NCBI GenBank assembly: GCA_900088475.1
Contig: FLMG01002540.1
Coordinates: 1 to 64,000, forward strand
DNA from: Hyphochytrium catenoides
Lineage: Eukaryota; Protista; Hyphochytriomycota
Length of the DNA stretch: 64,000 bases
Direction: 5' to 3'
In this document: positions 31,694 through 46,400 of the stretch, piece by piece
Layout of the letters: each line of letters opens with the position of its first letter
How positions within the stretch are numbered: position 1 is the stretch's first letter
The notes under the pieces: model-generated
Databases searched by the model: none
The model's input: the letters and a program-made list of their open reading frames with translations, nothing else
Told to the model about the DNA's origin: nothing
Position numbers and translations under genes: made by a program

Positions 31694-34600
31694 ATGGGGA
31701 ACGCCCCAGCGACAATGAAAGGGTTACCTGACAGCCCCGCAGAAGAGAAGGCGGATGACTCCTTTACGATGCAGGTAGGCGGGTTCTTAGGTGCTAGAGT
31801 ACAAAGCTATACTTAGCTGCACTTTACCTTTCTACAGCTTCATTGGTCCTCGAAGATCTCAACGGTCTCATTGCGTCTTCACGAAGTCCCTCACCTCCCT
31901 TGATATGTCTTACGCCTGAGCACCGCTGCCAAATCTTGTGCGTCCTCGTTCTGCTTTGCACCTAACTAACTTCGCAACCCCACATCACCTTACGTTTGCA
32001 TTTCCGGCATATTTTCCACCGCACAATGTTCCTTACACTAGAACATTATGGAGGATCTCCGCTTGGTGCAATGGGAAGGCTATGTGGAAAAGCAGAGTGA
32101 AGTGCTTAAGCAATGGAGGCAGCGATACTTTGTCTTGGAGGGCAGAGTGCTCTATTGTAAGCCAGCTGCCCACAAGGCTCCTGCCAGTTTCCTTGGACAA
32201 GTCCACTTGCCCTTCTGGTCTTCTCTCTCCTTCACCTTAGGCGTGTCGCACCTGGCTAATTGTGTCGTATTCTTGTAAACGATGCTGATTACTGTTCTAC
32301 CCAGACTATGCTTCCAAGCAACAAGCGATGGATAAGAGAACAAATAGGGGCCAATTGTATATAACAAATGTACGATCTCTGATCTCCTGGAGTGAGTATT
32401 GTCTCCTCAACCTTGTTTCCGTGACCTTTCAGGCTTACGCTGAGGACTATGCTGCTCCTAATCCTAATGCTCGCCCGCTTTACGGCTTTGCTGTGGAACT
32501 GAGCAGCAAGAAAGTTTTGCATTGTGCAACCTACGGAGAGTTTGAACGATCCGCATGGGTTCAGTGGATGCAGGTACGCCGATCGCACACTGGCCACCTG
32601 CAGTCATATGAAGATTAAATAGAAGGGAAATAGGATAGAAGATTCCATCTGGGCCCCTGTGCTAAGTCGTGCTAGAATGACCGGCGTTAATATCATCTCG
32701 GGTTGAGTTGACTGCCCAGACTGACCCTTACTGTCATTCAAGATTGCCATTTCGGCGTCGAAGGCCGAAAGACTTGAAGCAGAGAGTGCACTTTCTGAAG
32801 TCTTTCAGTCCATGAAAGCAGCTTATGATCAGTTCTCCCCGGAGGAAAGAAGAGAAAAGCTCACAGCCCACTTTTTGAAGGAGGCTCTATGCTCTCGGAA
32901 GCTCTGCATGGAGCTGTTACCTCTTGTCAATAGAGGTTAGACAACTTAGACTTTACTCTCTTCGCTTTGCCCTGATAGAATCAATCCACCTTATCCGCTA
33001 CTTACTCCCTTCCCTCCAATTACTTCTTATGCGTCCAGCTGGTGCCGTCTATCAATTCTAGGTAGTCTCTGCTTGTTGCTGACTATTGTCCTGTAGAAAT
33101 TGTATTGAAGCAGAACTATCCCAAGTCTGTACCTTTCTCTGGTACTTTTAACGGCCGAGAGGGCCTCGTTTGCTTCTTTGAGCTTTGGACAGGGAATCTC
33201 CATCAGAAAGATCTGGCACTAAAGCTGAAGAAGGTGTGTGCTGGTTTTAGGGTGGAAATTTTAATAGGTGGTAGGACGTACTTGAGTTGCTCGCGAGTGA
33301 AGGAGCTGAGCTGAACTTCTATCTATGCCTGGAGATTGTTTAGGGGCACGTCGGCGGATGTCGTGCCAAGCGATAGCGAAGGACTGACGCAGAGCCGTAA
33401 CTCTGCACAGTTATGGTTTAGAAGTCTGATCCTCGATAGCTTCACAGGGGCCACGTTCTTTAGCAAATATATAGGGGATAGACGAACGAAAGAAGCAGGG
33501 AATGCCTTTTAAGTGCGTGGCGTGATATCTCCACCCAAACTGACTACATTCTAACGCAGTGTAAGGACAATGAGCTTCTATACGAGGGCAAAGAGACTAT
33601 ATTTTTGGAGCAAGTAACAGTTCAAGGTCCCAAGCTTATAGAAACTGAGCAGCGATTTGACCTTCTTGTCACTGTTGATCCCTTTGGCCTTCCACTCATT
33701 GTGGAGAAGGTGGTCGGACCAGATCTCATACAAAGGTGAACAAGCCTGCCTTAGCTCCCCGCCGTCCCCTAAATACTTCGTTTGGACCTCAATCTTTTCG
33801 TCTTGACGTGATCACTGTTTATAAGACAAGCCTAACTGTAGCGCACGACTACCTGCTGCCGCTCTTATATCGTAGCATTTGGCAAAACAGTTTGGTGACG
33901 GGGCGCTGCACATACAATCCATACTCCCACGCACGAGAAGGAATCAATCCAGCCTTTCATACTCCTGTGGATATTCAGTCTTTTAAAACTAGGAGAACTC
34001 TAAGCCTGACAATGGCAGACTTCGAACCTATCAGACTAATAGGGAGAGGATCTTTCGGAATGGTAGGCTCGGGCGTGCTTTGGTCAAACGCTCTGCTTTG
34101 TTCGCCAATTACCTTGACGATCTTGACATTGACGCTCGATTCTTGTCTCTATGTTTGAGTATATACCTGCTGTGCAGTTATTGGAAAGTGCATAGTGTTT
34201 ACTTTGAAGCATCCTCCTATCTCTCTACTATATTGTCAATTGGAAGAGAGCTCAAACATACTCTACCCTGTCTTGTATACTTACCATCTGATCTGAAGGT
34301 CATTCTCGCACGGCGAAAGCGCGACAAGAAGCTCTACGCTATCAAAGTGATAGACAAGACCCGACTGGATGAAGACAGTATATCGCGCCTAGAGACAGAG
34401 ACCTTAGTAGGGATGTACAGTCGGCATCCTTATCTTTGTGGTGTGCAGTTCGCTTTCCATTCACCAACCAAGATTTTCCTGGGAATGAAGTTCTACTGTG
34501 GAGGAGACTTACGGTACCACATCTACCATGAGGTAAGCTTTTAGGAAATAGAACGGTGGCGAGGTATCGTTTCCAGAGATTGCATGCGACCTTTGCGCTC

Positions 34601-37125
34601 TCTGCTGGGAAACGCGTCATGCTGAGGCTCTTTTTTTCTCTCGTCAATCTAGGACCAAAACAGCTCGGCGCGATCCCTTTTACGAGGTTCACTATTTTCC
34701 AACAGTAAGAATGTGGTTAAGAATGGTCTAGAGCTAGACCGTGTTAGGCTCTATACCGCTGAAGTAGTCCTCGCGCTTATTGATCTGCATTCCCGAGGGA
34801 TCATATTTCGGTAGGTAAAGCTCAAGAGTCGAGAGAAATATCACCGTGCATCATCTACTACATGGGTGATTTGAATCATCCAGCGTTGCCCCTTCTATCT
34901 CGGGCTCTTGAACCTCATACTTGTTGTCTTCGCAGTGACCTGAAGCCGTCGAACATCATGATAGATAATGATGGGCATATAGCCCTTGTAGACTTTGGCC
35001 TATCCAAATGCAATGTCAAGTTCTTAACTGGGGCGCAAACCTTCGCTGGCTCGGCATACTACCTGGCCCCTGAGCTCTTAGCGTCGGATTGGGAGAGAAG
35101 GCTTTACGGATACGGTTACGCTGCTGATTGGTGGTAAGTTTATTATAGCATCTCTCCTCTCACGCTACTACCGCCCACACCCACGTTTTACCTATCGTCA
35201 TGACTTCGCCCCATCCTTCCTCTGCCAACTCCTTCGCCTAAGCATCTTGTAGCTGTTTCTGTAATTTCAGTAGGCGCGACTTCCCTGCTCTTCCGCGTGG
35301 TGGTACTTCTTCGTCACTACCTTTTCTTATCAAACAGCCATGTGTCTCCACAAAAATAAATCCATTATCTGCTTTTCCTCGGCTTCCTATGCTAACCTTT
35401 CCTCTGGATGAATGACTTCGACGCTCCTATCGATTGGCTCCCTCGTATTTAACGTCTTCGGTTTCAATTTTGCACGGCAGGAGCTTGGGTATCCTGCTTT
35501 ATGAGATGTACTACGGTACTCCACCTTTCTACCACGAGAATAACCAGGATGTATTCAAGGCCATCCTCGAGAGGCAGGTTATCTTTCCCGCAGACGATCC
35601 TGGCCCCGCCGAGCTGCAAGACCTGGTTAAGCAGGTATAGTCAACCAGTCAGGCATACAGGAGACTTTTACCTTGCTGCGTAGAGGTGTTGATTAGTCCT
35701 GGACTCACGAAAAGTGACTAGTTTGCTGCATGCCGGTAGCTCAATCGCTTCCAGCGCATCATGGGGACTAATGCTGTTTGTTCCTCCAGCTGCTGGTAAA
35801 GGATCCTAAGGAGAGGCTGGGTAGAATTACTCGGAAGGTCTTGGACCATCCATTCTTTGCCGACATTAACTGGGAGGAGCTCCTCGAGAGCAAGGTTACT
35901 GCACCCTGGATCCCTTCAATGGTAGGCCATCCTGAAATGTCGTTAGTCTGCACCAGATGTAGAGACTAACTATCATGAAAATATTCTCAACCTCTGTCTC
36001 TACTTCTCTCCTTTCAACTTTCGTGGGCGCTATGTCACACAGAAATCTGAAGATTCGGCGGATTACATATCTAAGCAAAAGTATCGCGCCGGCGATCGCA
36101 GAATGTTAAGGGGTGAGAAGAGAAAGAATGAAAGGAAGCGCGCAGAGTCAACCCGTCCGAGTGGGCGCAGTGCAATCGAGATGGAGGCGGAGGATGAGTC
36201 CAAATACCGGATGTTCAACTTTGATACGGCACTGAAGAAACCGGAAAACGACTACGATCCTTTCATTGAGAATCCGCAGGACTTCAATGAGGTGGAAACG
36301 ATCAACGGAGATGTCGCGTCGCTCCGTCAATCACATCTCTTCTCTCCAAGTCACTCCCTAGCCCTTCCATCTCCCACCTACTCGCTCTCAGCCTTTAAGG
36401 AACCGGAGCAGGATCCTCCTTCTGGTGGACGAGCACGAAAGGCAAGACCTCAATCCGTGAGCGGACTTGACAGGAGGACATCTGACCTGACCGTCGCTAG
36501 CGAGGGAGTTGTGAGTGAAGGAGGGGACAGAGAGAAGCCGGGAGGCAAAAAGAAGCCTTGGAGCAGCGTGGGCCAATCTTTGAAGAAGTTCAGTTTGCCT
36601 TTCCAGCGAAAGCGAAGGCACTCGCCCGCTCCTGCTGGACAATCAGCTACACCTCATAGCCCGTACTTCCCACAGACACCTTCCGCTGAGGCTTCGAAAG
36701 TCTCTCCTGCGGCAAAGCCTATCAGTTTTGACGATCTACCGCCTAGTGACCTAACTTCTATTCTATACCCAGAGAGGAGGTCTTCAAGGGCTCTCACTCC
36801 CCCAGCTCTGCCTACCTCGGCCCCTGGTGACGCTTCTAAGGACAAGCATAGTGAAGCGGATCCGAGTGACCGCATGAAGGGATTGTTGTTCACCTTGAAT
36901 GAGGCGAATGACGCTGCAAATCGTCTTCGTGCCTTTAGCGAACACTATGCTCAGCTCTATGGAGACCAGATCACGGCCACAGATGATCGTACAACTGCCT
37001 CTACGCAACACAAGCGTGCGCCAGTCTACCCCGAGAACGGGAAGAAGACAGATATGGCGGGAGAAGAGAATGGAACAGCACTAGCGTATCAACAGATGGG
37101 ACTTCTGAATCTGCAAGAAGCCTGA
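31694..37125 (+). CDS. AGC-family Ser/Thr kinase (Akt/SGK/S6K-like) with N-terminal PH domain and NTF2/SnoaL-like insert; multi-exon
   Basis: MGNAPAT start. PH domain: WEGYVEKQSEVLKQWRQRYFVLEGRVLY...ERSAWVQWMQ. Kinase: DFEPIRLIGRGSFGM, YAIKVIDK, DLKPSNIMID, DFGLSK, TFAGSAYYLAPE, DWWSLG, HPFFADINWEEL...APWIP. Long disordered tail to TGA at 37125. Confidence 0.88.
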
Positions 37126-38444
37126 TAGCAAGACAGTGGGCAAGGAGAGCGTATCTTCGTTCGCGCTTGTCCACTACTATTTATTGAATCAAAGTAAAAA
37201 CCAATAACACCAACTGTACTAGAACAGGTATTGTTCAGCTCGAATTGTGATGCCAGAGTGTCATACCACGGTCCTGGACTGAAAGTATGACTGGAGGCCC
37301 CTGCAAGCTCCCAATGCCCTATCCCTCTTTCGCCTAACGTTCTCACAGGAACCCATTTCCCCTAGGCGTTGACGTATAAAAGGCATAGAGTTCAACGTCA
37401 TCCAAACTGATCCTGGAGCTCTGAACAACCTTAATCCATACCTTCCACTGCCCACAGCGTCCCATGCTGATGCCTATCCCACTCCGCATACATCACAATC
37501 TGCAGTCTGTCTCAGTCTTCAAATAACCTCGCAAGTGGAGCTCCTGTTCATGTGTCCGCTCCCTTTTGGCCCATGCAAGGCAGCAGGACAATTTTGACGG
37601 TTCGCGTGGGGCCGCCGCCGCGTGGTCCCCCGAGCTGCCGAACAGCCATTGCAAAAGCAGGAATTTTCTGCAAGTGTCTTGCCCTTTTGGCCCTGAACTT
37701 GTGAATATTTACACAATATTCACGCTTTGCAGCTTTTGTACCTCACTACTGTGGCACTTTTCCCAGTCGTATGCTGTCATTTGTGGTGTCAGACATAATT
37801 GACACGAGGGATGAAGACAGCGTGTTTGTGTTATTTCACAGGAGCCATGATGTCAGTTTAGTTCGACTTTCATCACTCTGTTCAATGTAGGTAATCCGGG
37901 TTAGGAGGTGGGTGAATAGGGTGGGTCAAAGCTCGCAGAGTTATAGAGAGAGATCATAGATCCCATGTCTGAGACCCGTATCTGGGTCACCCAAGTCCTG
38001 AGGTGTCTGCACTTTCTTTCTTCCGTTCCTCTGCTTTTCCTGGTTGCACGGCCAGAGTTCCGAAAGCTCATTGCCGCCGCTCTGTGAGACCAGTCCACAG
38101 CCCTCCAGACATCCTGCAGCTTTGGCTCCGTCAGACCAGAGTTCAGGGTCTTCACAGATTGTGAAGCCTGATTGGGATCTTTCCTTCTGTCTCCGTCGCT
38201 CCCCCGCTTCTTCAGTATTCTCGCGTTAATGCTTGCGCCTAACAGAGCGTGATACTCAGTGTGAGACGTGGAAGGTGGAGGCTTTCTTCTTAGCCCCATC
38301 CTCTTTGCGAAGAGGAAGAGAGTGACCTTCACTCCTGAATGGGCTAGTTCTGGTGAGCGTTAGCTCAAAGAATGTCATCAAAGTGACAACGAACAGCGCC
38401 TTCCCTTGGAGCACATAGCGATACTTCTTTCCGTCGGAGGAGTG

Positions 38445-41400
38445 ATGAGTGTAACTGGGCGGCAGCAGCGAATTCGCATTGGGAAGGGAATCTATCGGTA
38501 GGGATTTTATGTGGACAAGGCCATGTATGTGGTCCGCACTGATCCTGACCTCCTGTGTCTAGGGTTGAGGAGCAGATTGGCCGAGGTTCCTATGGCACGG
38601 TAAGGTCCCCCAATGACAACTGACGTAGTGAGAAACCTCACATAGAGTGCCGCTAGGTGCATAAAGCAGTTGATGAGGAGACTCTTGAGACTGTTGCCAT
38701 TAAGGTCATTCGTAAAGATCGCGTAAAGAAGGACCATGAGCGACGAAGCATCATGAAAGAAATTGCGACTATGAAGGTGGCGGTGGAGCAATTTGAGAAT
38801 GGCCACCCAAACATCGTCCGTCTCATCGACACCTCCATGTCGGAGAACCACATCTACATCGTGCTGGTACGTAGTAGACATGTAAAGATGGGACAATCGA
38901 GCATAGACTATCAAATTTAGGCGTAGAGCTGCCACACAAACCTCTTTTAAACCATACTAAGAGGGAAAAGGAAGAGAGACAAAGAAAAAGAAGGGAAAGG
39001 AGAGAGCTGCCACACATGGGCTTAGAACTCAAAGATAATCAGGGTTGGAGCCGAGATGGAGTTTGGAGCAATGGAGCCTGTGTTTGGTGACTGTCTAATG
39101 AAGAATCGGATGAGGGCTTACACGCTGCAGGCTCCGGGATAACTGAAAAACCTCTCTTTCTTAGGAGTACTGCGGTGGTGGTGACATCTCAAGCTATATA
39201 AAAAAACATGGCAGGCTTAACGAAGAACAGGCCAAAAAGTTCCTGTTACAGTTGGGTACGTACAGTCCATCCTGACTTGGTTCACGTCAGTTCCATTCTT
39301 GAATAGTGGGCTGAGACGTTGCATCTGTCCTGGTCCCCGGTCCTGTGGCTTTTTTTCCTTCTGTGTTTATCGACTACCTCATCGCAGCGTCCGGACTCCA
39401 GTTCCTCCGTTCCCAGAGCGTCGTTCACAGGTAGGACGGAGAGAATGTACCAAGAAACCGTATCTAAGACTAGTTCGTACGGGCGCCTACTTCTTCGTTA
39501 TTAACGCGTACGAGTGTGCGTGCTTGTGTCTTACATACCTCACTTTCCTTGACAGAGATTTGAAGCCAGCTAATCTCTTGCTATCAAGCACCGACTTGGA
39601 GGGGGCAAAGCTTAAAATAGGTAATACGTAGCTGTAGCTGTCGATCTCCCCGGCGGACCCGGATATAATTCCCTTCACTAAACTCTTGCCTTTCCCTGCA
39701 GCCGATTTTGGCTTTGCTCGAGAGCTAAAGTCGGACTCCCTCGCAGAAAGCGTGGTGGGCTCCCCTCTATATATGGTGGGTCTGAACATTAGAAGAGCAT
39801 CTTGCACATGGATTCACAACGAGTTGGACCGGCCATTGTAACGCCTTGCCTCTTCACTTCTTTTGTGACCATAGGCTCCCGAACTCCTAGAGTTCAAGAG
39901 CTACGATGCGAGGGCTGACCTATGGTCGGTGGGAATCATTCTGTACGAGATGCTGACGCGGGACCACCCCTTTCTGACAGTGGAAGGTATGTGCTTGCCA
40001 TTGACGAAAAGATTGTATCCCTACCACGGTCCCATCATTGTGTGTAATTACGACGCTTTTTGTCAGTCGAAATGGTTTTGTGACCTACATCCCACATGGC
40101 AATAACCGCCTCCTGTTTACTACGTCTACAGGTGTCCATGCAACCAATCATATGGCCCTTCGCAGAAACATCAAGCGCTACTTTGAACTGTACGGACAGC
40201 TTACTCTCCCCGCCGACGTGGAGGTCAGTGAGGCCTGCGCCCATTTGCTTGAGGTTAGTCCCATCGTCCTGAATTGGCACTTGTCACTTAGTCCTTGTTA
40301 TTCTTCGATAACCGCAGTCTGCTTGCTCGGGTGATAGTAAGGCATTCATGCCCTCCCCATTTGAAATGGCAATGGCTGCATTACAGCTCCTTATGTATGC
40401 ATGACTCGGTCAATACGCGACTTCCATAAAGCATGGTTGAGCATGTTGGCATTCAAGCCTCCTTTTCTCTTTGTCGGGCCAGGATGGGAGACCCATCCGA
40501 GCCTATCTATTTCCCACTTTCTAACGTTACTGAAATCTCTCGATTGTCTAGGGTCTGGTACGGTCTGACCCCAAGAGAAGACTGAGCTTCGAAGACTTCT
40601 TCAGTGATCCGTTCTTACTCCCACCTCGCCCAGAACCGGACGAGCTAGCGCGTACAGCAGTTTCTGACTCTCCACCTTCCCAGTCAATGCCCACAGTGCC
40701 TGAGGACGAAGGTACGTGGAACGATGTGACCATAATTGATAGTAGACAATATCGTCTGGCGGAGCGAAGTTCAAATCCCCTTTTGTCTCTACACATAAAC
40801 TCCTTCCTGTCCATTGGCAAGGCCGCGTTACCTGTCTCTTTCCCACTTTCCTACTGAGCGTTGAGGCTTTCGAGCTCCATACGCAAATTATTCCCAAGCC
40901 AGAACACCCATTTCAAGTTATTAGTTCTTGCGGTTCTTGATGTAGCCACCCGTTCCTTTGGCCTCAGAGGGTTTCTGCTCACCTACTTTTCCTTTCTCTG
41001 CAGAACTGGAGATGAGCGATGACTTTGTCTTTGTTGATGACGAAGAGAACGCCGCTTTTCCCAGCCACCAAGAGAGCCAGGTCATCGATGTAGGTCCGGG
41101 CGTGACAGGAGATGTTGATGGCCATGGGACCAACGAAGGTTCCGCTTCAGGAACTTCATCCTCTCTCCACAGCGAAAGGCGAAGAGTCAATTCTGACGAG
41201 TCACTACCTTTTGAAGAGGATACTCAGCCACTGAGCCCTTATGCAAACAACGAAGGAGCAGGAGATTCTCTGAAGCAGCGCGATGCTGTTTGGAGCACAG
41301 GACTGGGTGGCAAGGACAAGAACACCACCCTTCTCCAGACCGCATCGCAACCCCCGACAACTTCTAAGGTTGAATCCTGTAGTGGCGGAACGACCAACCC

Positions 41401-43255
41401 CGAGATGGGTATAGGACTTCTTTCCTTAAACAGTATTCCATCTTCTATACCCTCTTCCATGGACCGCGATTTTAATGGAACTCGCTCGAAGATATCACAA
41501 ATGATTGATGATTGGGCAATCTCTTTCAAAAGGTAACTCTATGGTATCTGCTTTCATCTGTCTTTCCGTCTCTATCTTCTCCCGAGTGCTGCACTTAGAG
41601 TATCTATTAAGGACCCAAAAGAATTGTCCTTGCCGCGTTTGCCGTCTGCCTGATTGCGCCTCCTTTTGCATGGCATTTCCTCTATGCTTTCACATTCACT
41701 CTGTTACTCTCTAATAGCGTTATTTGTAAGACCCATGGTATTTGCTGCTGACCTCTTTACTATGCTAGTTTCCGGGTAGGCTCTCTGGGGCTGTTTGTTC
41801 CTACCCCGGCAGGGGATTATTTAGCTTTCCATGAGCACTGCCCGCATTATTATCTGTCAAGAGAGTCGATAGAGGCAGCCTCACAAGGGTCCACGTAAGC
41901 CAAGAGAAGCTCTTAGTTCTTCTGTTTAACATTTTACGAACGTAACGTGTCTATGTCGCTGGTTCGCTGCTTTATTTGTCCAGACGCCCTCCGTACGTGC
42001 TAGGAGTCATTGTCTTCGTGGAGGACCGGACGGCCACTGAGGTAGTCATGTACTGGCAAGAGTCATTGGAGTTTTTGTCCCTTGCGTCGTTCATAGCTGC
42101 TTTACAGCTCTTTTGTCAGTTGCTGTGAGGATTGGCTCTGCGTCCTTTTGCTCTTACACCCCCAAGCCTTCTCTTCGTTGTCTCCACGACGCTGGTCTGT
42201 ACTTGGATTGTGATGCTGGGATTTACTTGCGGAAATGTTCATTTTTATTGACATTCACAAATATCGCGCGCTGCTTGTGTTCTTTTGTTCTAATGCTGTT
42301 CCCTGCGCGACAGGCTGATAATCCCTTTAAACTTCGCGCCGGCACTTTGTACCATATCGTCACCGTCAGTCTAATCTCCCCTAATGCCGACACAACGCCC
42401 CCGGCCCTCACTTCCTTCAGACGAAGAATGGTAGAGCCAAAAATAGCCTTTCGAGGGTAAGCATGTCAGGTCCTTGGCCACAACGCTCTCAGGCTTTGTT
42501 GTCATCCCTTTTGCCATGGTTGCGGAGCCAAACAGTCTTCTTGTAGTTTGTCTTCTACTCGTTTGCTTAGCCTCGAGCTTGGATTACACGGTTATTGCGC
42601 TCTCTCATTGTAGGAAGCCGTTCTTTTGGAGGGGGAAGGGGTTTCTGGGCGATTCTTCATCTCCTTGTTAGCGGATGATTGGACTTAGACGCTAAGTAAC
42701 TTCTCGTGCCCTGCCGCCATATTCTTAGGTTTGAGGTGGGCGATGTTGCACTCTTTTTCCAGACTCCAGTACCCAGCCAATACGTGGCTTTCAATGAGGG
42801 CTGTCCCCACTACTTCTTGTCCGAGGAAAGTGTAGAGGCTGCACAGGATGGAGAAAGGTATGGGTCGCCTCTTCCCTTCAGCTGTGATTGGTCTGCCGTA
42901 GTTTCCTCTATCTGTCCTAGAGTTCTCATGTCGTCGAGTAAGAGGGGTCTAGGTTGGCCCAATATGCTCAATCGTATTGCTCCTACCATTTGTTCTCCTT
43001 TTGCCTGCAGCGACTTTCCCGCCTACATCTGTGGCGAGATTATATTTATGGATGAGAGGGTAGCAGCAGAGGTAAGCTACTTATTTGCTGTTTTGCCGCG
43101 ACTTGGGCACTATTGGCAGCTAGTCTCCCAACCGTACCTATGGATGAATTACTCACTATTCTGCAAACGCACTTATTTAGGGCGATAACCCATTCAACCT
43201 TCCACTTCAAACCGTTTACCACGTGGCGACTGTTGCTTCACCAAAGCGCAGATAA
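38445..43255 (+). CDS. ATG1: ATG1/ULK-family kinase fused to two C-terminal Atg11/FIP200 Claw-like domains; multi-exon
   Basis: Kinase: [105 protein letters not shown]-like DDFVFV. Then two repeats of ISF/IAF-F.VG..LF.PT...Y.AF...CPHY.LS.ES...Y..G.I.F...DNPF.L...T.YH..TV. Stop TAA 43253-43255. Confidence 0.88.
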
Positions 43256-43466
43256 TCTACAAAGATAGGCTTTGAGGGACGTCCCTTCCCTCAGTCTAAA
43301 AATGTATATTAGTTAATTTTAACTACGCCAGAACCCTAAGCGCCCGCTGTTCAATAGTGTTTGGTCTTACAAGGCAATGGATCTTACTGCTATCTTGCGC
43401 TTTCTAGGACCCTTCCTCTTGCACTTTGACGTTCTGGCTCCTTGTCCTATCGGTTCGCAGCGCTTA

Positions 43467-46400
43467 TTAACACGTAACATGTCGCTGGACAGCCTTCATA
43501 ATCTCTCCTCTCTGCAAGAGTAAGAGAGCTGCCTGTATGTCTGGGGCCATATAGCGGTCGCAGTCCCAGAATGGAATCTGAACAGGCAGAGACAAAGGAG
43601 GCGCCATGAGGCCAAAGTAACAAACTGCAATAACCAATAGGAGGGAATGAATGGAATTGACCCACGAAATCATACCAATCTATCAAATGCAAATGATGAA
43701 GGCGCTAGGGCGGGACCGAAGGTCATGTGAAGTATATGGCACTTGCAATTAAAGTGAGATGGCATAGTCAATCTCTCAGAACTTGTACCTTCTCTCGCAC
43801 AACCCCAATGACCTCCTCCAGAGGCCTTGTCGTCTTTAATGGTCGCTGGAGGTCAATACCCTGGCAGGCGGCTAGCAGCTCAATAGCAACAACCTGAAGA
43901 GTAAATTCATTTGTCTGTTAGTTCCGTCCCTCTCATTTCCCAGAGTTCTTTTTCTGTCTCCGCTTTCTTCTAATCAGACAACGCCAAAACTCTCGGACAT
44001 CTATAAGCTTCCCTCATATCCTCAGGCATGGATAAGAAGCAAGGCCACTGACCGTCTCTACATGTTCCACGACCTTCAAAGCCTTTCTTGCTGCCCAGCC
44101 TCCCATTGAGACATGGTCCTCCTTCGCAGCGCTAGTAGATATGGAGTCTATGGACGCTGGGTGGCAAAGTACCTGTTCAACGACAAAAGATAGTTAACTC
44201 CTTTCCTGATCGCGCATTTACCTCCTTTGACTGTCACGCTCTATATTTAAGCATTGTGAAACCTCATTCCTCCTTTGCGACCTTCCCTTTCGTCCTTCTC
44301 GTGTCAGGAGAGATGGGATTACCCTCCGATCCCCTTGCTGCCAATACTAGGAACCCTCTCCCTTTCTTTTCTTGGACTGATGTCGTGATACAAGCCGCTA
44401 TCTGTGGTTACCTTGTTCTCTGATACCAATGCCGCAGCCGTACAATGTGCAATCATGAACCCAGAGTTTAATCCTCCTGCCGGCACCAGGAAAGCAGGTA
44501 GTCCACTAAGTTGTGGGTTGCAGAGCCTTTCTATTCTTCTTTCGCTTATATTGGCGATCTCTGAGATCGCAATAGCCAGATAATCACACGCTTTGGCAGG
44601 ATACTCCCCATGGAAGTTCCCTCCAGATAGAGTGAAGCCAGATGGGGAGAACGGGAAGGAGTCTATTGGAGGAGGGGAGACTAAGGTGGCTTCATCACCA
44701 TCCTCTCCATCCTCTGGCCCTAGGAAGACCATTGGGTTGTCTGTGGCGCTATTCATCTCTGTTTGAATAATTCCTCGTACGAAGCGGAGGGTATCATGGG
44801 TCACGCCGTGTACCTGAGGAGAGCAGCGAAGAGTGTACGAATCTTGGACCTGATACAAACCGGATAGACGACGTAAGTTAAGATACACATAGACCGCGGC
44901 ACGAAGATGGTCCAGACTAAGTGCAGAACGATACGGAGTCATGTCTTTGGAATACCATGCATAGGTGTTGTCACTACCATGGGATCTCAAAAGTCAAAAG
45001 GGCCGAAAAGGTCCATGGCCTATAACCTATGCCATTCAGTTTGATCATGCCTTACCCTTGAACAATTAAAATGGCTGTGCGCGATTTCGCTTCGGTGCTG
45101 ATTTGAGTGTAAAACTGCCCTCATTCTTCCTGCAGCTTCCCCTTGCCCTTTATGAGGACGCGCGTCGTGAATTCTAGGATGCATGGCTCTGACTGTCCCT
45201 TTTAAGGCTTCTAGGGTAAGGGCAGTGACTATGTCAGCCTGAGACAGAGAGTTGCATGTGTAAGCCACTGATTGATCTCAACCTTTAGGAGCTGGTTTAA
45301 AGAGCTGGTAGAAGTAGGATGGCGACATACATAACAGCCAGCGTAGATACAGAGGAACCAGGAAATTGGTCGACCTAGAGGTTTCCAGGATCGTGTCGTA
45401 TACTCCAAGGTAAACGTGTAACCATCTACAGACGATTATTGTTACCTGTTTTGCAATATTTTCTGCCCTTACTAGAGCCTCTGCAGCTAGAGCCGTGATG
45501 AGCTGCGTCCCATTGATCATGGCCAGCCCTGAAGTAAGGGACAGTACCAATGCACAAGCTTTAGGTGAGATAGACCGACGTGATGAGGTACGAGCACTGA
45601 GTAAAGGAGGTAAGCCAGGGCGATGACAATCTTTTAAGAAAGAGATAGACACCATGTGAACTAAAGCTTTCAAGATCTGCCACTGGATTACTAACATTAC
45701 CTTCCTTAGCTTCCAGCTGTATCGGAGTCAACCCATTCTCACTCAGCACCGTTGCAGCGCTTCTCTTCTTCCCCTCCGGGTCCCACATCTCACCCATTCC
45801 CATAAGACCCAAGGCTAAGTGGGAGAGAGGAGCCAAATCACCTACGCATTTTTTGAGGAGAGGCATAAGAAATGGCAAGCCTGAAGGCATACAAGGGACT
45901 AATTGGCCCAGAGAGGACTTGAAAGCAAATAGCGCTCTCTACGTCGACGAGGCATGTTTAACAACAAGTACCGTCCTACAAGGAGCCGGTGAGTGTCCGG
46001 TGACCGTTCGACAAGAAACCGGTGAGTGTACTTAGTATCAGGGCAAATGGGCCTAGTCCTTCTATTCTTTCAAAACCCTCACCAGAAGCACCGACAGTCC
46101 CTTGCTCGGGAACGACCGAGAGGCAGTTCGCGTTAAAGGCGTCGATGATCTGTCGTAAGGTCTGGAGCCGGATGCCTGAATGGCCCTTGCACAAAATGTT
46201 GGCACGCAGAGCGAGCAACATGCGGGTGCGAGGTATCGAGAGCGGTGCTCCAACACCTGTAACGTAAGTATGGGTCAACCTGACGCTTGAACCGCAAAAG
46301 GGAACACAGATCAGTGCAAATGTCGCCACAGGGAGAATATAGGTGGAGATCCAACGAGAAGGAAATAAGAAAAGGGGGATGAATACTTTAAACTTTTGTT

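What the first reader, a model, noticed from the sequence alone, without database searches (positions are those of the whole stretch)
38445..43255. ATG1/ULK kinase fused to two tandem Atg11/FIP200 Claw domains: a possible one-polypeptide selective-autophagy initiator
Seen: after the ULK-type kinase and a disordered linker, the spliced frame continues into two roughly 90-aa repeats. Copy 1 reads [40 protein letters not shown]...[12 protein letters not shown]...[17 protein letters not shown]. Copy 2 reads [19 protein letters not shown]...[17 protein letters not shown]...[12 protein letters not shown]...[17 protein letters not shown]. No tandem-MIT (EAT) domain is evident. Established: this pattern is the C-terminal Claw of Atg11/FIP200, which binds cargo receptors, whereas yeast/animal/plant Atg1 ends in MIT domains and reaches Atg11/FIP200 as a separate subunit, largely through Atg13. 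Inference: this kinase could dock directly and bivalently on cargo receptors, bypassing the Atg13/scaffold layer. I cannot tell how widespread this architecture is or whether it has been described.
Basis: partly seen in the sequence, partly recalled or inferred. Interest (0 to 1): 0.88.

Follow-up and report, generated by a model that had tools for sequence, protein, structure and literature searches.

The report
ATG1-type kinase with two Claw domains
This is one real 17-exon gene for an autophagy-type (ATG1/ULK) protein kinase that ends in two cargo-receptor-docking "Claw" domains instead of the usual Atg13-binding tail. The layout is a new member of a family already present, and briefly noted in 2017, in water moulds (oomycetes), and its function has never been tested.

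Summary
A clean 17-exon, all GT-AG model (38445-43255, + strand, 695 aa) encodes:
- an intact Ser/Thr kinase;
- a roughly 195-aa Ser/Asp/Glu-rich linker;
- two tandem Claw domains, 51% identical to each other, each passing Pfam PF10377 (ATG11) on a single exon.

The model aligns end to end with oomycete proteins that have Pkinase plus two PF10377 domains. Two metagenomic relatives carry kinase and Claw in one uninterrupted ORF, so the fusion is real.

The Claw-bearing kinases form one clade (98/98) inside the ATG1/ULK group. The window's gene is sister to all sampled oomycetes. The Claw duplication predates that split. An AlphaFold model of an orthologue's tail matches only the FIP200 Claw (Z about 11, next hit 4.7). 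No MIT/EAT tail is detectable. An ULK1-like LIR motif sits just after the kinase throughout the family.

The architecture is not new. Chen et al. 2017 (PMC5431975) noted oomycete "Atg1a" with an Atg11 domain, and dozens of database entries carry it. P. sojae also keeps Atg1b, Atg11 and Atg13, so "bypassing the scaffold" is not supported as a replacement.

Added here: the conserved doubling of the Claw, the LIR motif, and the extension outside oomycetes. Function is untested.

The parts
38445..43255 (+). Whole gene: 17 exons, 695 codons plus a stop at 43253-43255.
   Evidence: Splice model with all GT-AG introns and an intact frame. It aligns end to end (aa 1-694) with 615-786-aa oomycete orthologues.
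38445..40629 (+). Ser/Thr kinase domain, exons 1 to 10 (aa 1 to about 295). Motifs: GRGSYG (aa 24), VAIK (43), HRDLKPAN (144), DFG (168), APE (192).
   Evidence: Pfam Pkinase on exons 3 and 8. Catalytic motifs found by pattern scan. 60-69% identical to oomycete orthologue kinases. Placed in the ATG1/ULK clade.
40630..41512 (+). Linker of about 195 aa rich in Ser/Asp/Glu/Gly/Pro (end of exon 10 plus most of exon 11), probably disordered.
   Evidence: No Pfam hit. Composition. All three non-synonymous variants seen between haplotypes fall here. The equivalent inter-domain segments in the orthologue model have pLDDT of about 40.
41015..41047 (+). LIR/AIM-like motif [11 protein letters not shown] (core F330-V-F-V333) about 35 residues after the kinase.
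   Evidence: The pattern [DES][DES][FYW][VIL]x[VIL] occurs at the same place in the window and in 28 of the 29 full-length kinase-plus-Claw relatives scanned, plus two partial proteins (P0001, P0003); P0126 lacks it. Human ULK1 has its LIR at 354-366, with D355 at position X-2 (PMC6499816). Binding was not tested.
41513..42370 (+). Claw domain 1 (aa 493-579), from the last codons of exon 11 through exons 12 and 13 to the start of exon 14.
   Evidence: PF10377 on exon 12, 26.6 bits. Sister to oomycete Claw-1 with 99/95 support. Its first strand lies in the same exon as the linker.
42371..42439 (+). Short inter-Claw linker of about 23 aa inside exon 14.
   Evidence: Alignment. Orthologues have 45-90 residues here, modelled with low confidence.
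42440..43237 (+). Claw domain 2 (aa 603-690), from the end of exon 14 through exons 15, 16 and 17, followed by a conserved tail ending PKR-R/T.
   Evidence: PF10377 on exon 15, 34.1 bits. Groups with oomycete Claw-2 at 82/82 support. The same C-terminal ending is seen in orthologues.

Best explanation
The locus is a single gene for a member of the Claw-bearing ATG1/ULK kinase family, called 'Atg1a' in oomycetes.

Shown here:
- An intact ULK-family kinase.
- An ULK1-like LIR-type motif directly behind the kinase.
- A disordered linker.
- Two tandem Atg11/FIP200-type Claw domains in place of the tandem-MIT (Atg13-binding) tail.
- The whole layout, including the Claw duplication, is conserved from this organism (sister to oomycetes) across all sampled oomycete orders. 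It also occurs in at least two uncultured eukaryotes.

Inferred mechanism:
- The two Claws give one chain the bivalent docking surface that FIP200 and Atg11 obtain by dimerising. The kinase is therefore recruited directly, and with avidity, to proteins carrying FIR/Atg11-binding-type motifs (cargo receptors, or core factors that use such motifs).
- Crowding on a multivalent cargo brings kinase domains together and activates them by activation-loop autophosphorylation. A Ser occupies the position of ULK1 T180.
- The LIR motif then ties the kinase to ATG8-decorated membrane.
- It most likely runs beside the canonical Atg1b-Atg13-Atg11 complex as a dedicated selective-autophagy arm, rather than replacing it.
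For: One gene:
- The splice model is clean.
- It is collinear end to end with intron-poor oomycete proteins.
- Relatives P0113 and P0126 are uninterrupted ORFs carrying kinase plus Claw.
- Exon 10 joins kinase to linker, and exon 11 joins linker to the first Claw strand.
- Independent DNA contigs bridge 39506-41402 and 40467-43300.
- 8 of 8 indels between haplotypes lie in predicted introns. Of the 12 exonic substitutions, 9 are synonymous. These include all 8 in kinase exons or in Claw-encoding exons 14, 16 and 17 (7 inside the domains, one 3 residues past Claw 1); the 3 non-synonymous ones are in the linker.

Kinase family:
- Best solved-structure hits for the orthologue kinase are ULK3 (179 bits), ULK1 (163) and ULK2 (162), then SIK3 (147).
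- The nearest non-orthologous database kinases carry ATG1 MIT domains.
- In the tree, Claw-kinases form one clade (98/98) inside an ATG1/ULK clade (100/99) set against CaMK-type outgroups.

Claw:
- PF10377 is found on both copies. Orthologues have two stretches each.
- An AlphaFold2 model of P0104:380-615 has two folded domains with pLDDT 80-92.
- Foldseek: all 24 significant hits are the FIP200 Claw.
- VIA-align: Z of 10.6-11.3, against 4.7 for the next fold.

Avidity and dimer logic:
- The FIP200 Claw is a dimer, and its authors suggested that dimerisation may serve to increase avidity (PMC6477179).
- Artificial dimerisation of S. pombe Atg1 bypasses Atg11 (PMC7511232).

The LIR motif is conserved.
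Against: - There are no functional data for any member of the family, and no RNA run was listed for this organism.
- The FIP200 pocket residues R1573, R1584 and K1569 are replaced (NPF/NPY, Ile/Val, acidic or neutral) in both copies. Only the aromatic equivalent of F1574 is kept.
- The AlphaFold model gives no confident relative placement of the two Claws (pTM 0.54).
- The position of the clade relative to ULK1/2-ATG1 versus ULK3 is unresolved; the tree is a polytomy and ULK3 is the best PDB hit.
- The structure was modelled on an orthologue, not on the window's own protein, because the spliced protein has no reference.
Confidence: 0.6

Rival explanations
1. The Claws do not dock on cargo receptors. 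Instead they work as an assembly or regulatory module. They could bind FIR/LIR-like acidic-hydrophobic motifs in core autophagy factors (human FIP200 Claw also binds ATG16L1). Alternatively they could bind the kinase's own LIR-like motif, in cis for auto-inhibition or in trans for oligomerisation.
For: FIR motifs overlap LIR motifs, and Claw and LC3B binding to p62 are mutually exclusive (PMC6477179). PDB entry 9j54 is the FIP200 Claw with ATG16L1. An acidic LIR-like motif is conserved in every two-Claw member.
Against: AlphaFold2 of the LIR-to-C-terminus construct (P0104:322-615) leaves the motif unstructured, at pLDDT about 42-44 with no strand. It therefore predicts no docking. This is weak evidence because the alignment was shallow (21 sequences).
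Confidence: 0.2
2. The kinase is ULK-family but does not initiate autophagy. It would be a ULK3-like or lineage-specific signalling kinase that borrowed the Claw fold for another kind of docking.
For: ULK3 is the best solved-structure match (179 bits against 163 for ULK1). The tree does not resolve the clade's sister group. The FIP200 phosphate-pocket arginines are absent.
Against: The nearest non-orthologous kinases are MIT-bearing ATG1s. A ULK1-type LIR motif is conserved. Within what I searched, PF10377 was seen with ATG17-like scaffolds (P0044) or with these kinases, and a few hits carried PF10377 alone. P. infestans has only two ULK kinases (PMC3019232).
Confidence: 0.12
3. One reading: the fused kinase replaces the Atg13/Atg11/Atg101 scaffold, so this lineage initiates autophagy with one polypeptide.
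For: No MIT tail is detectable in the window gene or in orthologue P0002. Dimerised Atg1 can bypass Atg11 in S. pombe.
Against: P. sojae retains Atg1b with the DUF3543/MIT tail, plus Atg11 (with an Atg17 domain) and Atg13, alongside Atg1a (PMC5431975). The rest of this genome could not be searched.
Confidence: 0.06
4. Annotation artefact: a kinase gene and a separate double-Claw gene lie next to each other and were joined by the reading.
For: No RNA evidence exists for this organism. Several database entries are double-Claw ORFs without a kinase (P0004-P0006).
Against: Full collinearity with orthologues. Uninterrupted kinase-plus-Claw ORFs in P0113 and P0126. P0005 is the tail of the 767-aa P0113. 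P0004-P0006 sit on contigs of 912-1474 bp, so they are probably fragments. Exon 11 carries both the linker and the first Claw strand.
Confidence: 0.02

Closest known systems
Oomycete 'Atg1a' (Chen et al. 2017, Sci Rep, PMC5431975). In databases it appears as 'ULK/ULK protein kinase', 'Serine/threonine-protein kinase involved in autophagy' or, wrongly, 'Autophagy-related protein 11'.
   Same: Same order of parts over the whole length: kinase, LIR-like motif, linker, Claw 1, Claw 2, and a PKR-T/R end. Identity is about 45% overall and 60-69% in the kinase. Each Claw copy is orthologous to the matching oomycete copy.
   Different: The window's gene branches outside all sampled oomycetes (99/95). 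It has 16 introns and the shortest inter-Claw linker. The paper mentions only 'an Atg11 domain', not the conserved doubling or the LIR motif.
Canonical ATG1/ULK1/ULK2
   Same: ULK-family kinase domain with intact catalytic motifs. A Ser sits at the activation-loop position of ULK1 T180. An acidic F/Y-V-x-V LIR-type motif follows the kinase, then a long disordered Ser-rich linker.
   Different: The C-terminal tandem MIT (EAT) domain that binds Atg13 is absent and is replaced by two Claws.
Atg11 / FIP200 (RB1CC1) C-terminal Claw
   Same: Pfam PF10377. The fold matches the FIP200 Claw at Z about 11, rmsd 2.2-2.5 A over about 88 residues. The aromatic residue at the F1574 position is conserved. 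Two Claws per functional unit, as in the FIP200 dimer.
   Different: There is no Atg17-like scaffold and no coiled coils. The two Claws are in tandem in one chain rather than brought together by a coiled-coil dimer. The FIP200 residues R1573, R1584 and K1569 are not conserved. The NPF/NPY motif is shared with the other non-animal Claws in the hit list.
ULK3 (kinase plus two MIT domains)
   Same: Best solved-structure match of the kinase domain. A short protein with two small tandem docking domains at the C-terminus.
   Different: The docking domains are beta-sheet Claws, not helical MIT domains. Orthology to ULK3 was not resolved.

Membership tests
ATG1/ULK protein kinase family | Kinase domain groups with ULK/ATG1 kinases rather than with other Ser/Thr kinases. 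| tested here: met
   For the orthologue, PDB hits are ULK3 179 bits, ULK1 163 and ULK2 162, against SIK3 147. In the tree the window kinase lies inside a 100/99 clade with MIT-bearing ATG1s and apart from CaMK-type outgroups. Sampling lacked human ULK1/3/4, yeast Atg1 and oomycete Atg1b.
ATG1/ULK protein kinase family | Catalytically competent kinase: Gly loop, VAIK Lys, HRD, DFG, APE. | tested here: met
   GRGSYG, VAIK, HRDLKPAN, DFG and APE are all present in the model.
ATG1/ULK protein kinase family | C-terminal tandem MIT / EAT domain that binds Atg13 (PF12063, PF21127, PF24497). | tested here: not met
   No such Pfam hit on any window exon or on the full-length orthologue P0002. The same families are found in neighbouring canonical ATG1s.
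ATG1/ULK protein kinase family | LIR/AIM motif in the region after the kinase. | tested here: met
   The sequence motif D-D-F-V-F-V is present at aa 328-333. An equivalent motif occurs at the same place in 28 of the 29 full-length relatives scanned; P0126 lacks it. ATG8 binding itself cannot be tested with these tools.
ATG1/ULK protein kinase family | Required for autophagosome formation. | not testable with these tools
   I found no functional study of any Claw-bearing member. Chen et al. report that attempts to silence PsAtg1 gave no stable transformants.
Atg11/FIP200 Claw domain (PF10377) | Sequence match above Pfam's curated threshold. | tested here: met
   Exon 12 scores 26.6 bits and exon 15 scores 34.1 bits, cut-off 22. 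Exon 15 to exon 16 read through the in-frame intron scores 33.5 bits.
Atg11/FIP200 Claw domain (PF10377) | Claw fold. | tested here: met
   Tested on orthologue P0104:380-615, not on the window's own protein. All 24 significant Foldseek hits are the FIP200 Claw. VIA-align Z is 10.6-11.3, followed by a drop to 4.7.
Atg11/FIP200 Claw domain (PF10377) | FIP200-type phospho-FIR pocket (R1573, R1584, K1569, F1574). | tested here: not met
   R1573 aligns with Pro of NPF, R1584 with Ile/Val, and K1569 with a non-basic residue. Only the F1574 aromatic is kept. The non-animal single-Claw proteins in the hit list also lack these arginines, so this pocket is not a family-wide feature.
Atg11/FIP200 scaffold proteins | N-terminal Atg17-like domain and long coiled coils ahead of a single Claw. 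| tested here: not met
   The N-terminus is a kinase and there is no ATG17_like hit. Compare P0044, which has ATG17_like plus ATG11. The gene shares only the Claw with Atg11/FIP200.
Oomycete Atg1a-type (Pkinase plus Claw) kinases | Orthology of kinase and of each Claw, with collinear architecture. | tested here: met
   End-to-end BLASTP alignments. Kinase clade at 98/98, with the window sister to oomycetes at 99/95. Claw-1 clade at 99/95; Claw-2 grouping at 82/82.

The most novel reading that the evidence does not exclude
The tandem Claws form an intramolecular equivalent of the FIP200/Atg11 Claw dimer. A single ATG1-type kinase chain can then recognise multivalent cargo receptors and switch itself on by cargo-driven clustering, with no Atg13, Atg11 or Atg101. 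This would be a natural counterpart of the synthetic experiments that tether the kinase to cargo. It arose once in the common ancestor of oomycetes and their sister lineage, or earlier, given the two deeper metagenomic members.
Probability: 0.22. Interest if true: 0.65.

Novelty: new member of a known kind. Interest (0 to 1): 0.38.

Why it matters
Selective autophagy in yeast and animals depends on a chain of contacts: receptor, Claw of Atg11/FIP200, Atg13, and ATG1/ULK1. Here nature has shortened that chain by placing the receptor-docking module on the kinase itself, and has kept it that way across a whole group of organisms that includes major crop and fish pathogens.

The family offers a compact system for asking whether receptor docking plus clustering is enough to fire an ATG1 kinase. 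It is also a lineage-specific protein in oomycetes.

The gene in this window adds a sister-lineage member. That member shows that the double Claw and the LIR motif are ancestral features. The basic observation, however, is already in the literature and in databases.

Tried and rejected
- Searching the PDB by sequence with single Claw exons (41-42 aa) found nothing. The orthologue's whole tail did find the FIP200 Claw at E of 3e-6.
- ESM Atlas search with one Claw exon returned only unrelated bacterial clusters at score 0.57.
- The first three-row alignment misplaced exon 13. I rebuilt it as A2.
- RNA evidence: no RNA run was listed. The runs that hold the locus are DNA contigs, so splicing could not be observed directly.
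- The third homologue search (P0113 tail) returned nothing, not even the query itself, probably because P0113 is not a cluster representative. The taxonomic range beyond oomycetes therefore remains poorly sampled.
- Self-docking of the LIR-like motif on a Claw: AlphaFold2 of P0104:322-615 leaves the motif at pLDDT of about 43, which gives no support.
- Intramolecular Claw-Claw packing: pTM of 0.54 with a disordered linker, which is inconclusive. The tools return no PAE or coordinates.
- The two-gene or misassembly reading was rejected.
- The spliced window protein could not be passed to Pfam, structure or homology tools as a whole because no reference exists for it. All whole-protein tests were run on orthologues, or locally in scripts.
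Full report
**1. What is in the sequence**

Reading 38300-43500 and assembling exons by their GT..AG borders gives a 17-exon, 2088-nt coding sequence of 695 codons. It runs from the ATG at 38445 to the stop at 43253-43255. My first attempt placed the exon 12 donor one base too far. After correction every intron is GT-AG and the frame is open throughout.

The product has these parts:
- A protein kinase domain (aa 1 to about 295, exons 1-10).
- A region of about 195 residues rich in Ser, Asp, Glu, Gly and Pro.
- Two repeats of about 87 residues (aa 493-579 and 603-690), separated by about 23 residues.

The two repeats are 51% identical over 86 aligned positions, and the alignment score is 22.9 SD above shuffled controls. 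Each repeat is split by introns at the same three positions and phases. That is the signature of a tandem duplication of a three-intron unit.

**2. Domain identity**

- Pfam Pkinase matches exon 3 (34.7 bits) and exon 8 (37.9 bits).
- PF10377 (ATG11, the Claw-containing C-terminal domain) matches exon 12 (26.6 bits) and exon 15 (34.1 bits). Both are above the curated cut-off of 22, from about 41 residues each.
- The linker exon matches nothing, and no MIT-type family appears.
- The catalytic motifs are intact: GRGSYG, VAIK, HRDLKPAN, DFG and APE.

**3. Relatives and proof that this is one polypeptide**

I built a small profile from the window's own Claw pieces (alignment A2) and searched it against 1.84 billion representative proteins. 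It gave 74 hits. The best had four matched stretches, meaning two Claws each.

- P0002 (698 aa, Phytophthora ramorum) has Pkinase plus two PF10377 stretches and nothing else relevant.
- A word-indexed search with its tail found 41 proteins. They come from Phytophthora, Peronospora, Plasmopara, Bremia, Hyaloperonospora, Pythium, Globisporangium, Lagenidium, Albugo, Aphanomyces, Achlya, Saprolegnia and Thraustotheca.
- Nearly all of these carry precomputed Pkinase plus PF10377.
- Their names range from 'ULK/ULK protein kinase' to 'Serine/threonine-protein kinase involved in autophagy', and in one case, wrongly, 'Autophagy-related protein 11'.
- Local BLASTP shows that every complete orthologue has two Claws.
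- The window's model aligns with them from residue 1 to 694, at about 45% identity overall and 60-69% in the kinase.

Two more distant relatives from metagenomes are each encoded by one uninterrupted ORF on its contig. P0113 has 767 aa and two Claws. P0126 has 809 aa and one Claw. The kinase-Claw fusion is therefore a real protein and not a gene-model artefact.

Within the window, exon 10 carries the kinase end plus the linker start. Exon 11 carries the linker plus the first Claw strand.

No RNA run could be listed. DNA contigs from three runs do bridge the kinase and Claw parts, at 39506-41402 and 40467-43300. These contigs also reveal allelic differences:
- All 8 indels lie in my predicted introns. 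Exons are 43% of the gene span, so the chance of that is about 0.01.
- Of the 12 exonic substitutions listed, 9 are synonymous.
- Four of these synonymous changes lie in kinase exons. The other four lie in Claw-encoding exons 14, 16 and 17 (three inside the Claw domains, one 3 residues past Claw 1).
- The 3 non-synonymous changes all fall in the linker.

This pattern is what the reading frame and domain map predict.

**4. Kinase family**

- The orthologue's kinase finds ULK3 (179 bits), ULK1 (163) and ULK2 (162) as the best solved structures. SIK3 (147) and MARKs (about 138) come next.
- In the large protein database the nearest non-orthologous kinases (44-47% identity) are ATG1s with MIT-type tails. 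Examples are Balamuthia 'atg1' with ATG1-like MIT1 and MIT2, and green-lineage proteins with MIT_ATG1.
- A maximum-likelihood tree of 35 kinase domains puts all seven Claw-bearing kinases in one clade (98/98).
- That clade lies inside an ATG1/ULK clade separated from CaMK-type outgroups at 100/99.
- The window's kinase is sister (99/95) to a monophyletic oomycete group (99/93).
- The backbone inside the ULK clade is a polytomy, and my sampling lacked human ULK1/3/4, yeast Atg1 and oomycete Atg1b. Whether the clade is closer to ATG1/ULK1 or to ULK3 is open.

A further ATG1-like trait is a conserved acidic LIR-type motif. It reads D-D-F-V-F-V in the window, D-E-Y-V-M/I/L-V in oomycetes and D-D-F-V-L-V in P0113. 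It lies about 35 residues after the kinase in the window and in 28 of the 29 full-length relatives scanned; P0126 lacks it. Human ULK1 has its LIR at 354-366, with the core starting at F357 (PMC6499816). That its letters are D-D-F-V-M-V is from my own knowledge.

**5. The Claws**

- An AlphaFold2 model of the tail of an Aphanomyces orthologue (P0104:380-615, 27-sequence alignment) gives two well-folded beta-rich domains (pLDDT 80-92). They are joined by a low-confidence linker, and the pTM is 0.54.
- By Foldseek, all 24 significant PDB matches are FIP200 Claw entries, with target TM-scores up to 0.76.
- With VIA-align the FIP200 Claw scores Z of 10.6-11.3 (rmsd 2.2-2.5 A over about 88 residues). 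The next fold scores 4.7.
- A tree of Claw domains places the window's copy 1 as sister to all oomycete copy-1 domains (99/95). Copy 2 groups with the copy-2 domains (82/82). The duplication is therefore older than the split between this lineage and oomycetes.

The residues that form the phosphate-binding pocket of human FIP200 are R1573, R1584 and K1569. Mutating R1573, F1574 or R1584 abolishes p62 binding (PMC6477179). These basic residues are not conserved here:
- R1573 aligns with the Pro of an NPF/NPY motif.
- R1584 aligns with Ile or Val.
- Only the F1574 aromatic is kept.

The single-Claw, Atg11-type proteins in my hit list share the NPF/NPY motif. This is therefore a difference between animal and non-animal Claws, not a sign of decay.

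**6. How it probably works**

Shown: an intact ULK-family kinase, a LIR-type motif, two Claws, no MIT tail, and deep conservation under purifying selection.

Inferred, drawing on published work:
- The FIP200 Claw is a beta-0/beta-0 dimer, and its authors suggested that dimerisation may serve to increase avidity for receptor condensates.
- Dimerising S. pombe Atg1 artificially is enough to activate it and to bypass Atg11 (PMC7511232).

A chain with two Claws would have FIP200-like bivalency built in. It could be concentrated on multivalent receptors or cargo, and thereby activated, without the Atg13 bridge. The LIR motif would then hold it on ATG8-positive membrane.

P. sojae keeps Atg1b (MIT-type), Atg11 (with an Atg17 domain) and Atg13 beside Atg1a (PMC5431975). 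P. infestans has exactly two ULK kinases (PMC3019232). The fused kinase is therefore best seen as an added, probably selective, arm and not a replacement.

I tested one alternative, that the protein's own LIR-like motif docks on a Claw. AlphaFold2 of P0104:322-615 leaves the motif unstructured. That gives no support, though the evidence is weak.

**7. Known or new**

Chen et al. 2017 state that in oomycete Atg1a 'the DUF3543 domain ... is replaced by an Atg11 domain'. I found no later analysis or functional work.

The window's gene is therefore a new member of a known but uncharacterised kind.
- The Claw is always doubled in the oomycete and sister-lineage members, and the doubling is ancestral.
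- A ULK1-like LIR motif is part of the conserved design.
- The family extends outside oomycetes, to this intron-rich sister lineage and to two uncultured eukaryotes.
- The animal FIR pocket arginines are not shared.

Other notes of this scan describe the genome as a non-algal stramenopile with a kalium-channelrhodopsin-type gene. That fits the sister-to-oomycetes placement in my trees and suggests a hyphochytrid. I did not test the organism's identity directly.

Noticed in passing
window 42858-43010: Intron 15 is 153 nt long, in frame and free of stops. If retained it would insert 51 residues into the variable loop of Claw 2 without breaking the frame. I used this property to obtain a stop-free reference for searches.
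   Followed up: partly
window 33736-37125 (+): The upstream neighbour on the same strand looks like another multi-exon Ser/Thr kinase, with fragments such as IGRGSFG, YAIKVIDK and DLKPSNIMID...DFGLSK. It is followed by a 340-aa open frame rich in Ser and Pro. About 1.3 kb separates it from the ATG at 38445.
   Followed up: no
window 43467-44990 (-): The downstream neighbour is a histidine/phenylalanine ammonia-lyase-like gene on the opposite strand. It is arranged tail to tail, with only about 200 bp between the two 3' ends.
   Followed up: no
window 38400-43300: Contigs of the three DNA runs carry two haplotype-like versions. These include a 9-bp insertion after 42283 (intron 13) and 58 single-base differences, so the sequenced material appears heterozygous or mixed.
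   Followed up: partly
P0077 (Phytophthora cactorum, 920 aa); P0096 (Lagenidium giganteum, 1004 aa); P0003 (Pythium insidiosum, 719 aa): Some database orthologues carry 250-300 extra N-terminal residues, or lack part of a Claw. One is named 'Autophagy-related protein 11' although it is the kinase. These are probably gene-model and naming errors.
   Followed up: no
L001 2372-4801 (P0126): A metagenomic relative has the kinase and only one detectable Claw (residues 697-800), with no LIR-type motif by my pattern. It may be an older or reduced form of the architecture.
   Followed up: partly
P0004, P0005, P0006 (247-353 aa): These are double-Claw ORFs without a kinase on contigs of 912-1474 bp. 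P0005 is the tail of the 767-aa kinase P0113, so these are probably fragments and not stand-alone double-Claw proteins.
   Followed up: partly
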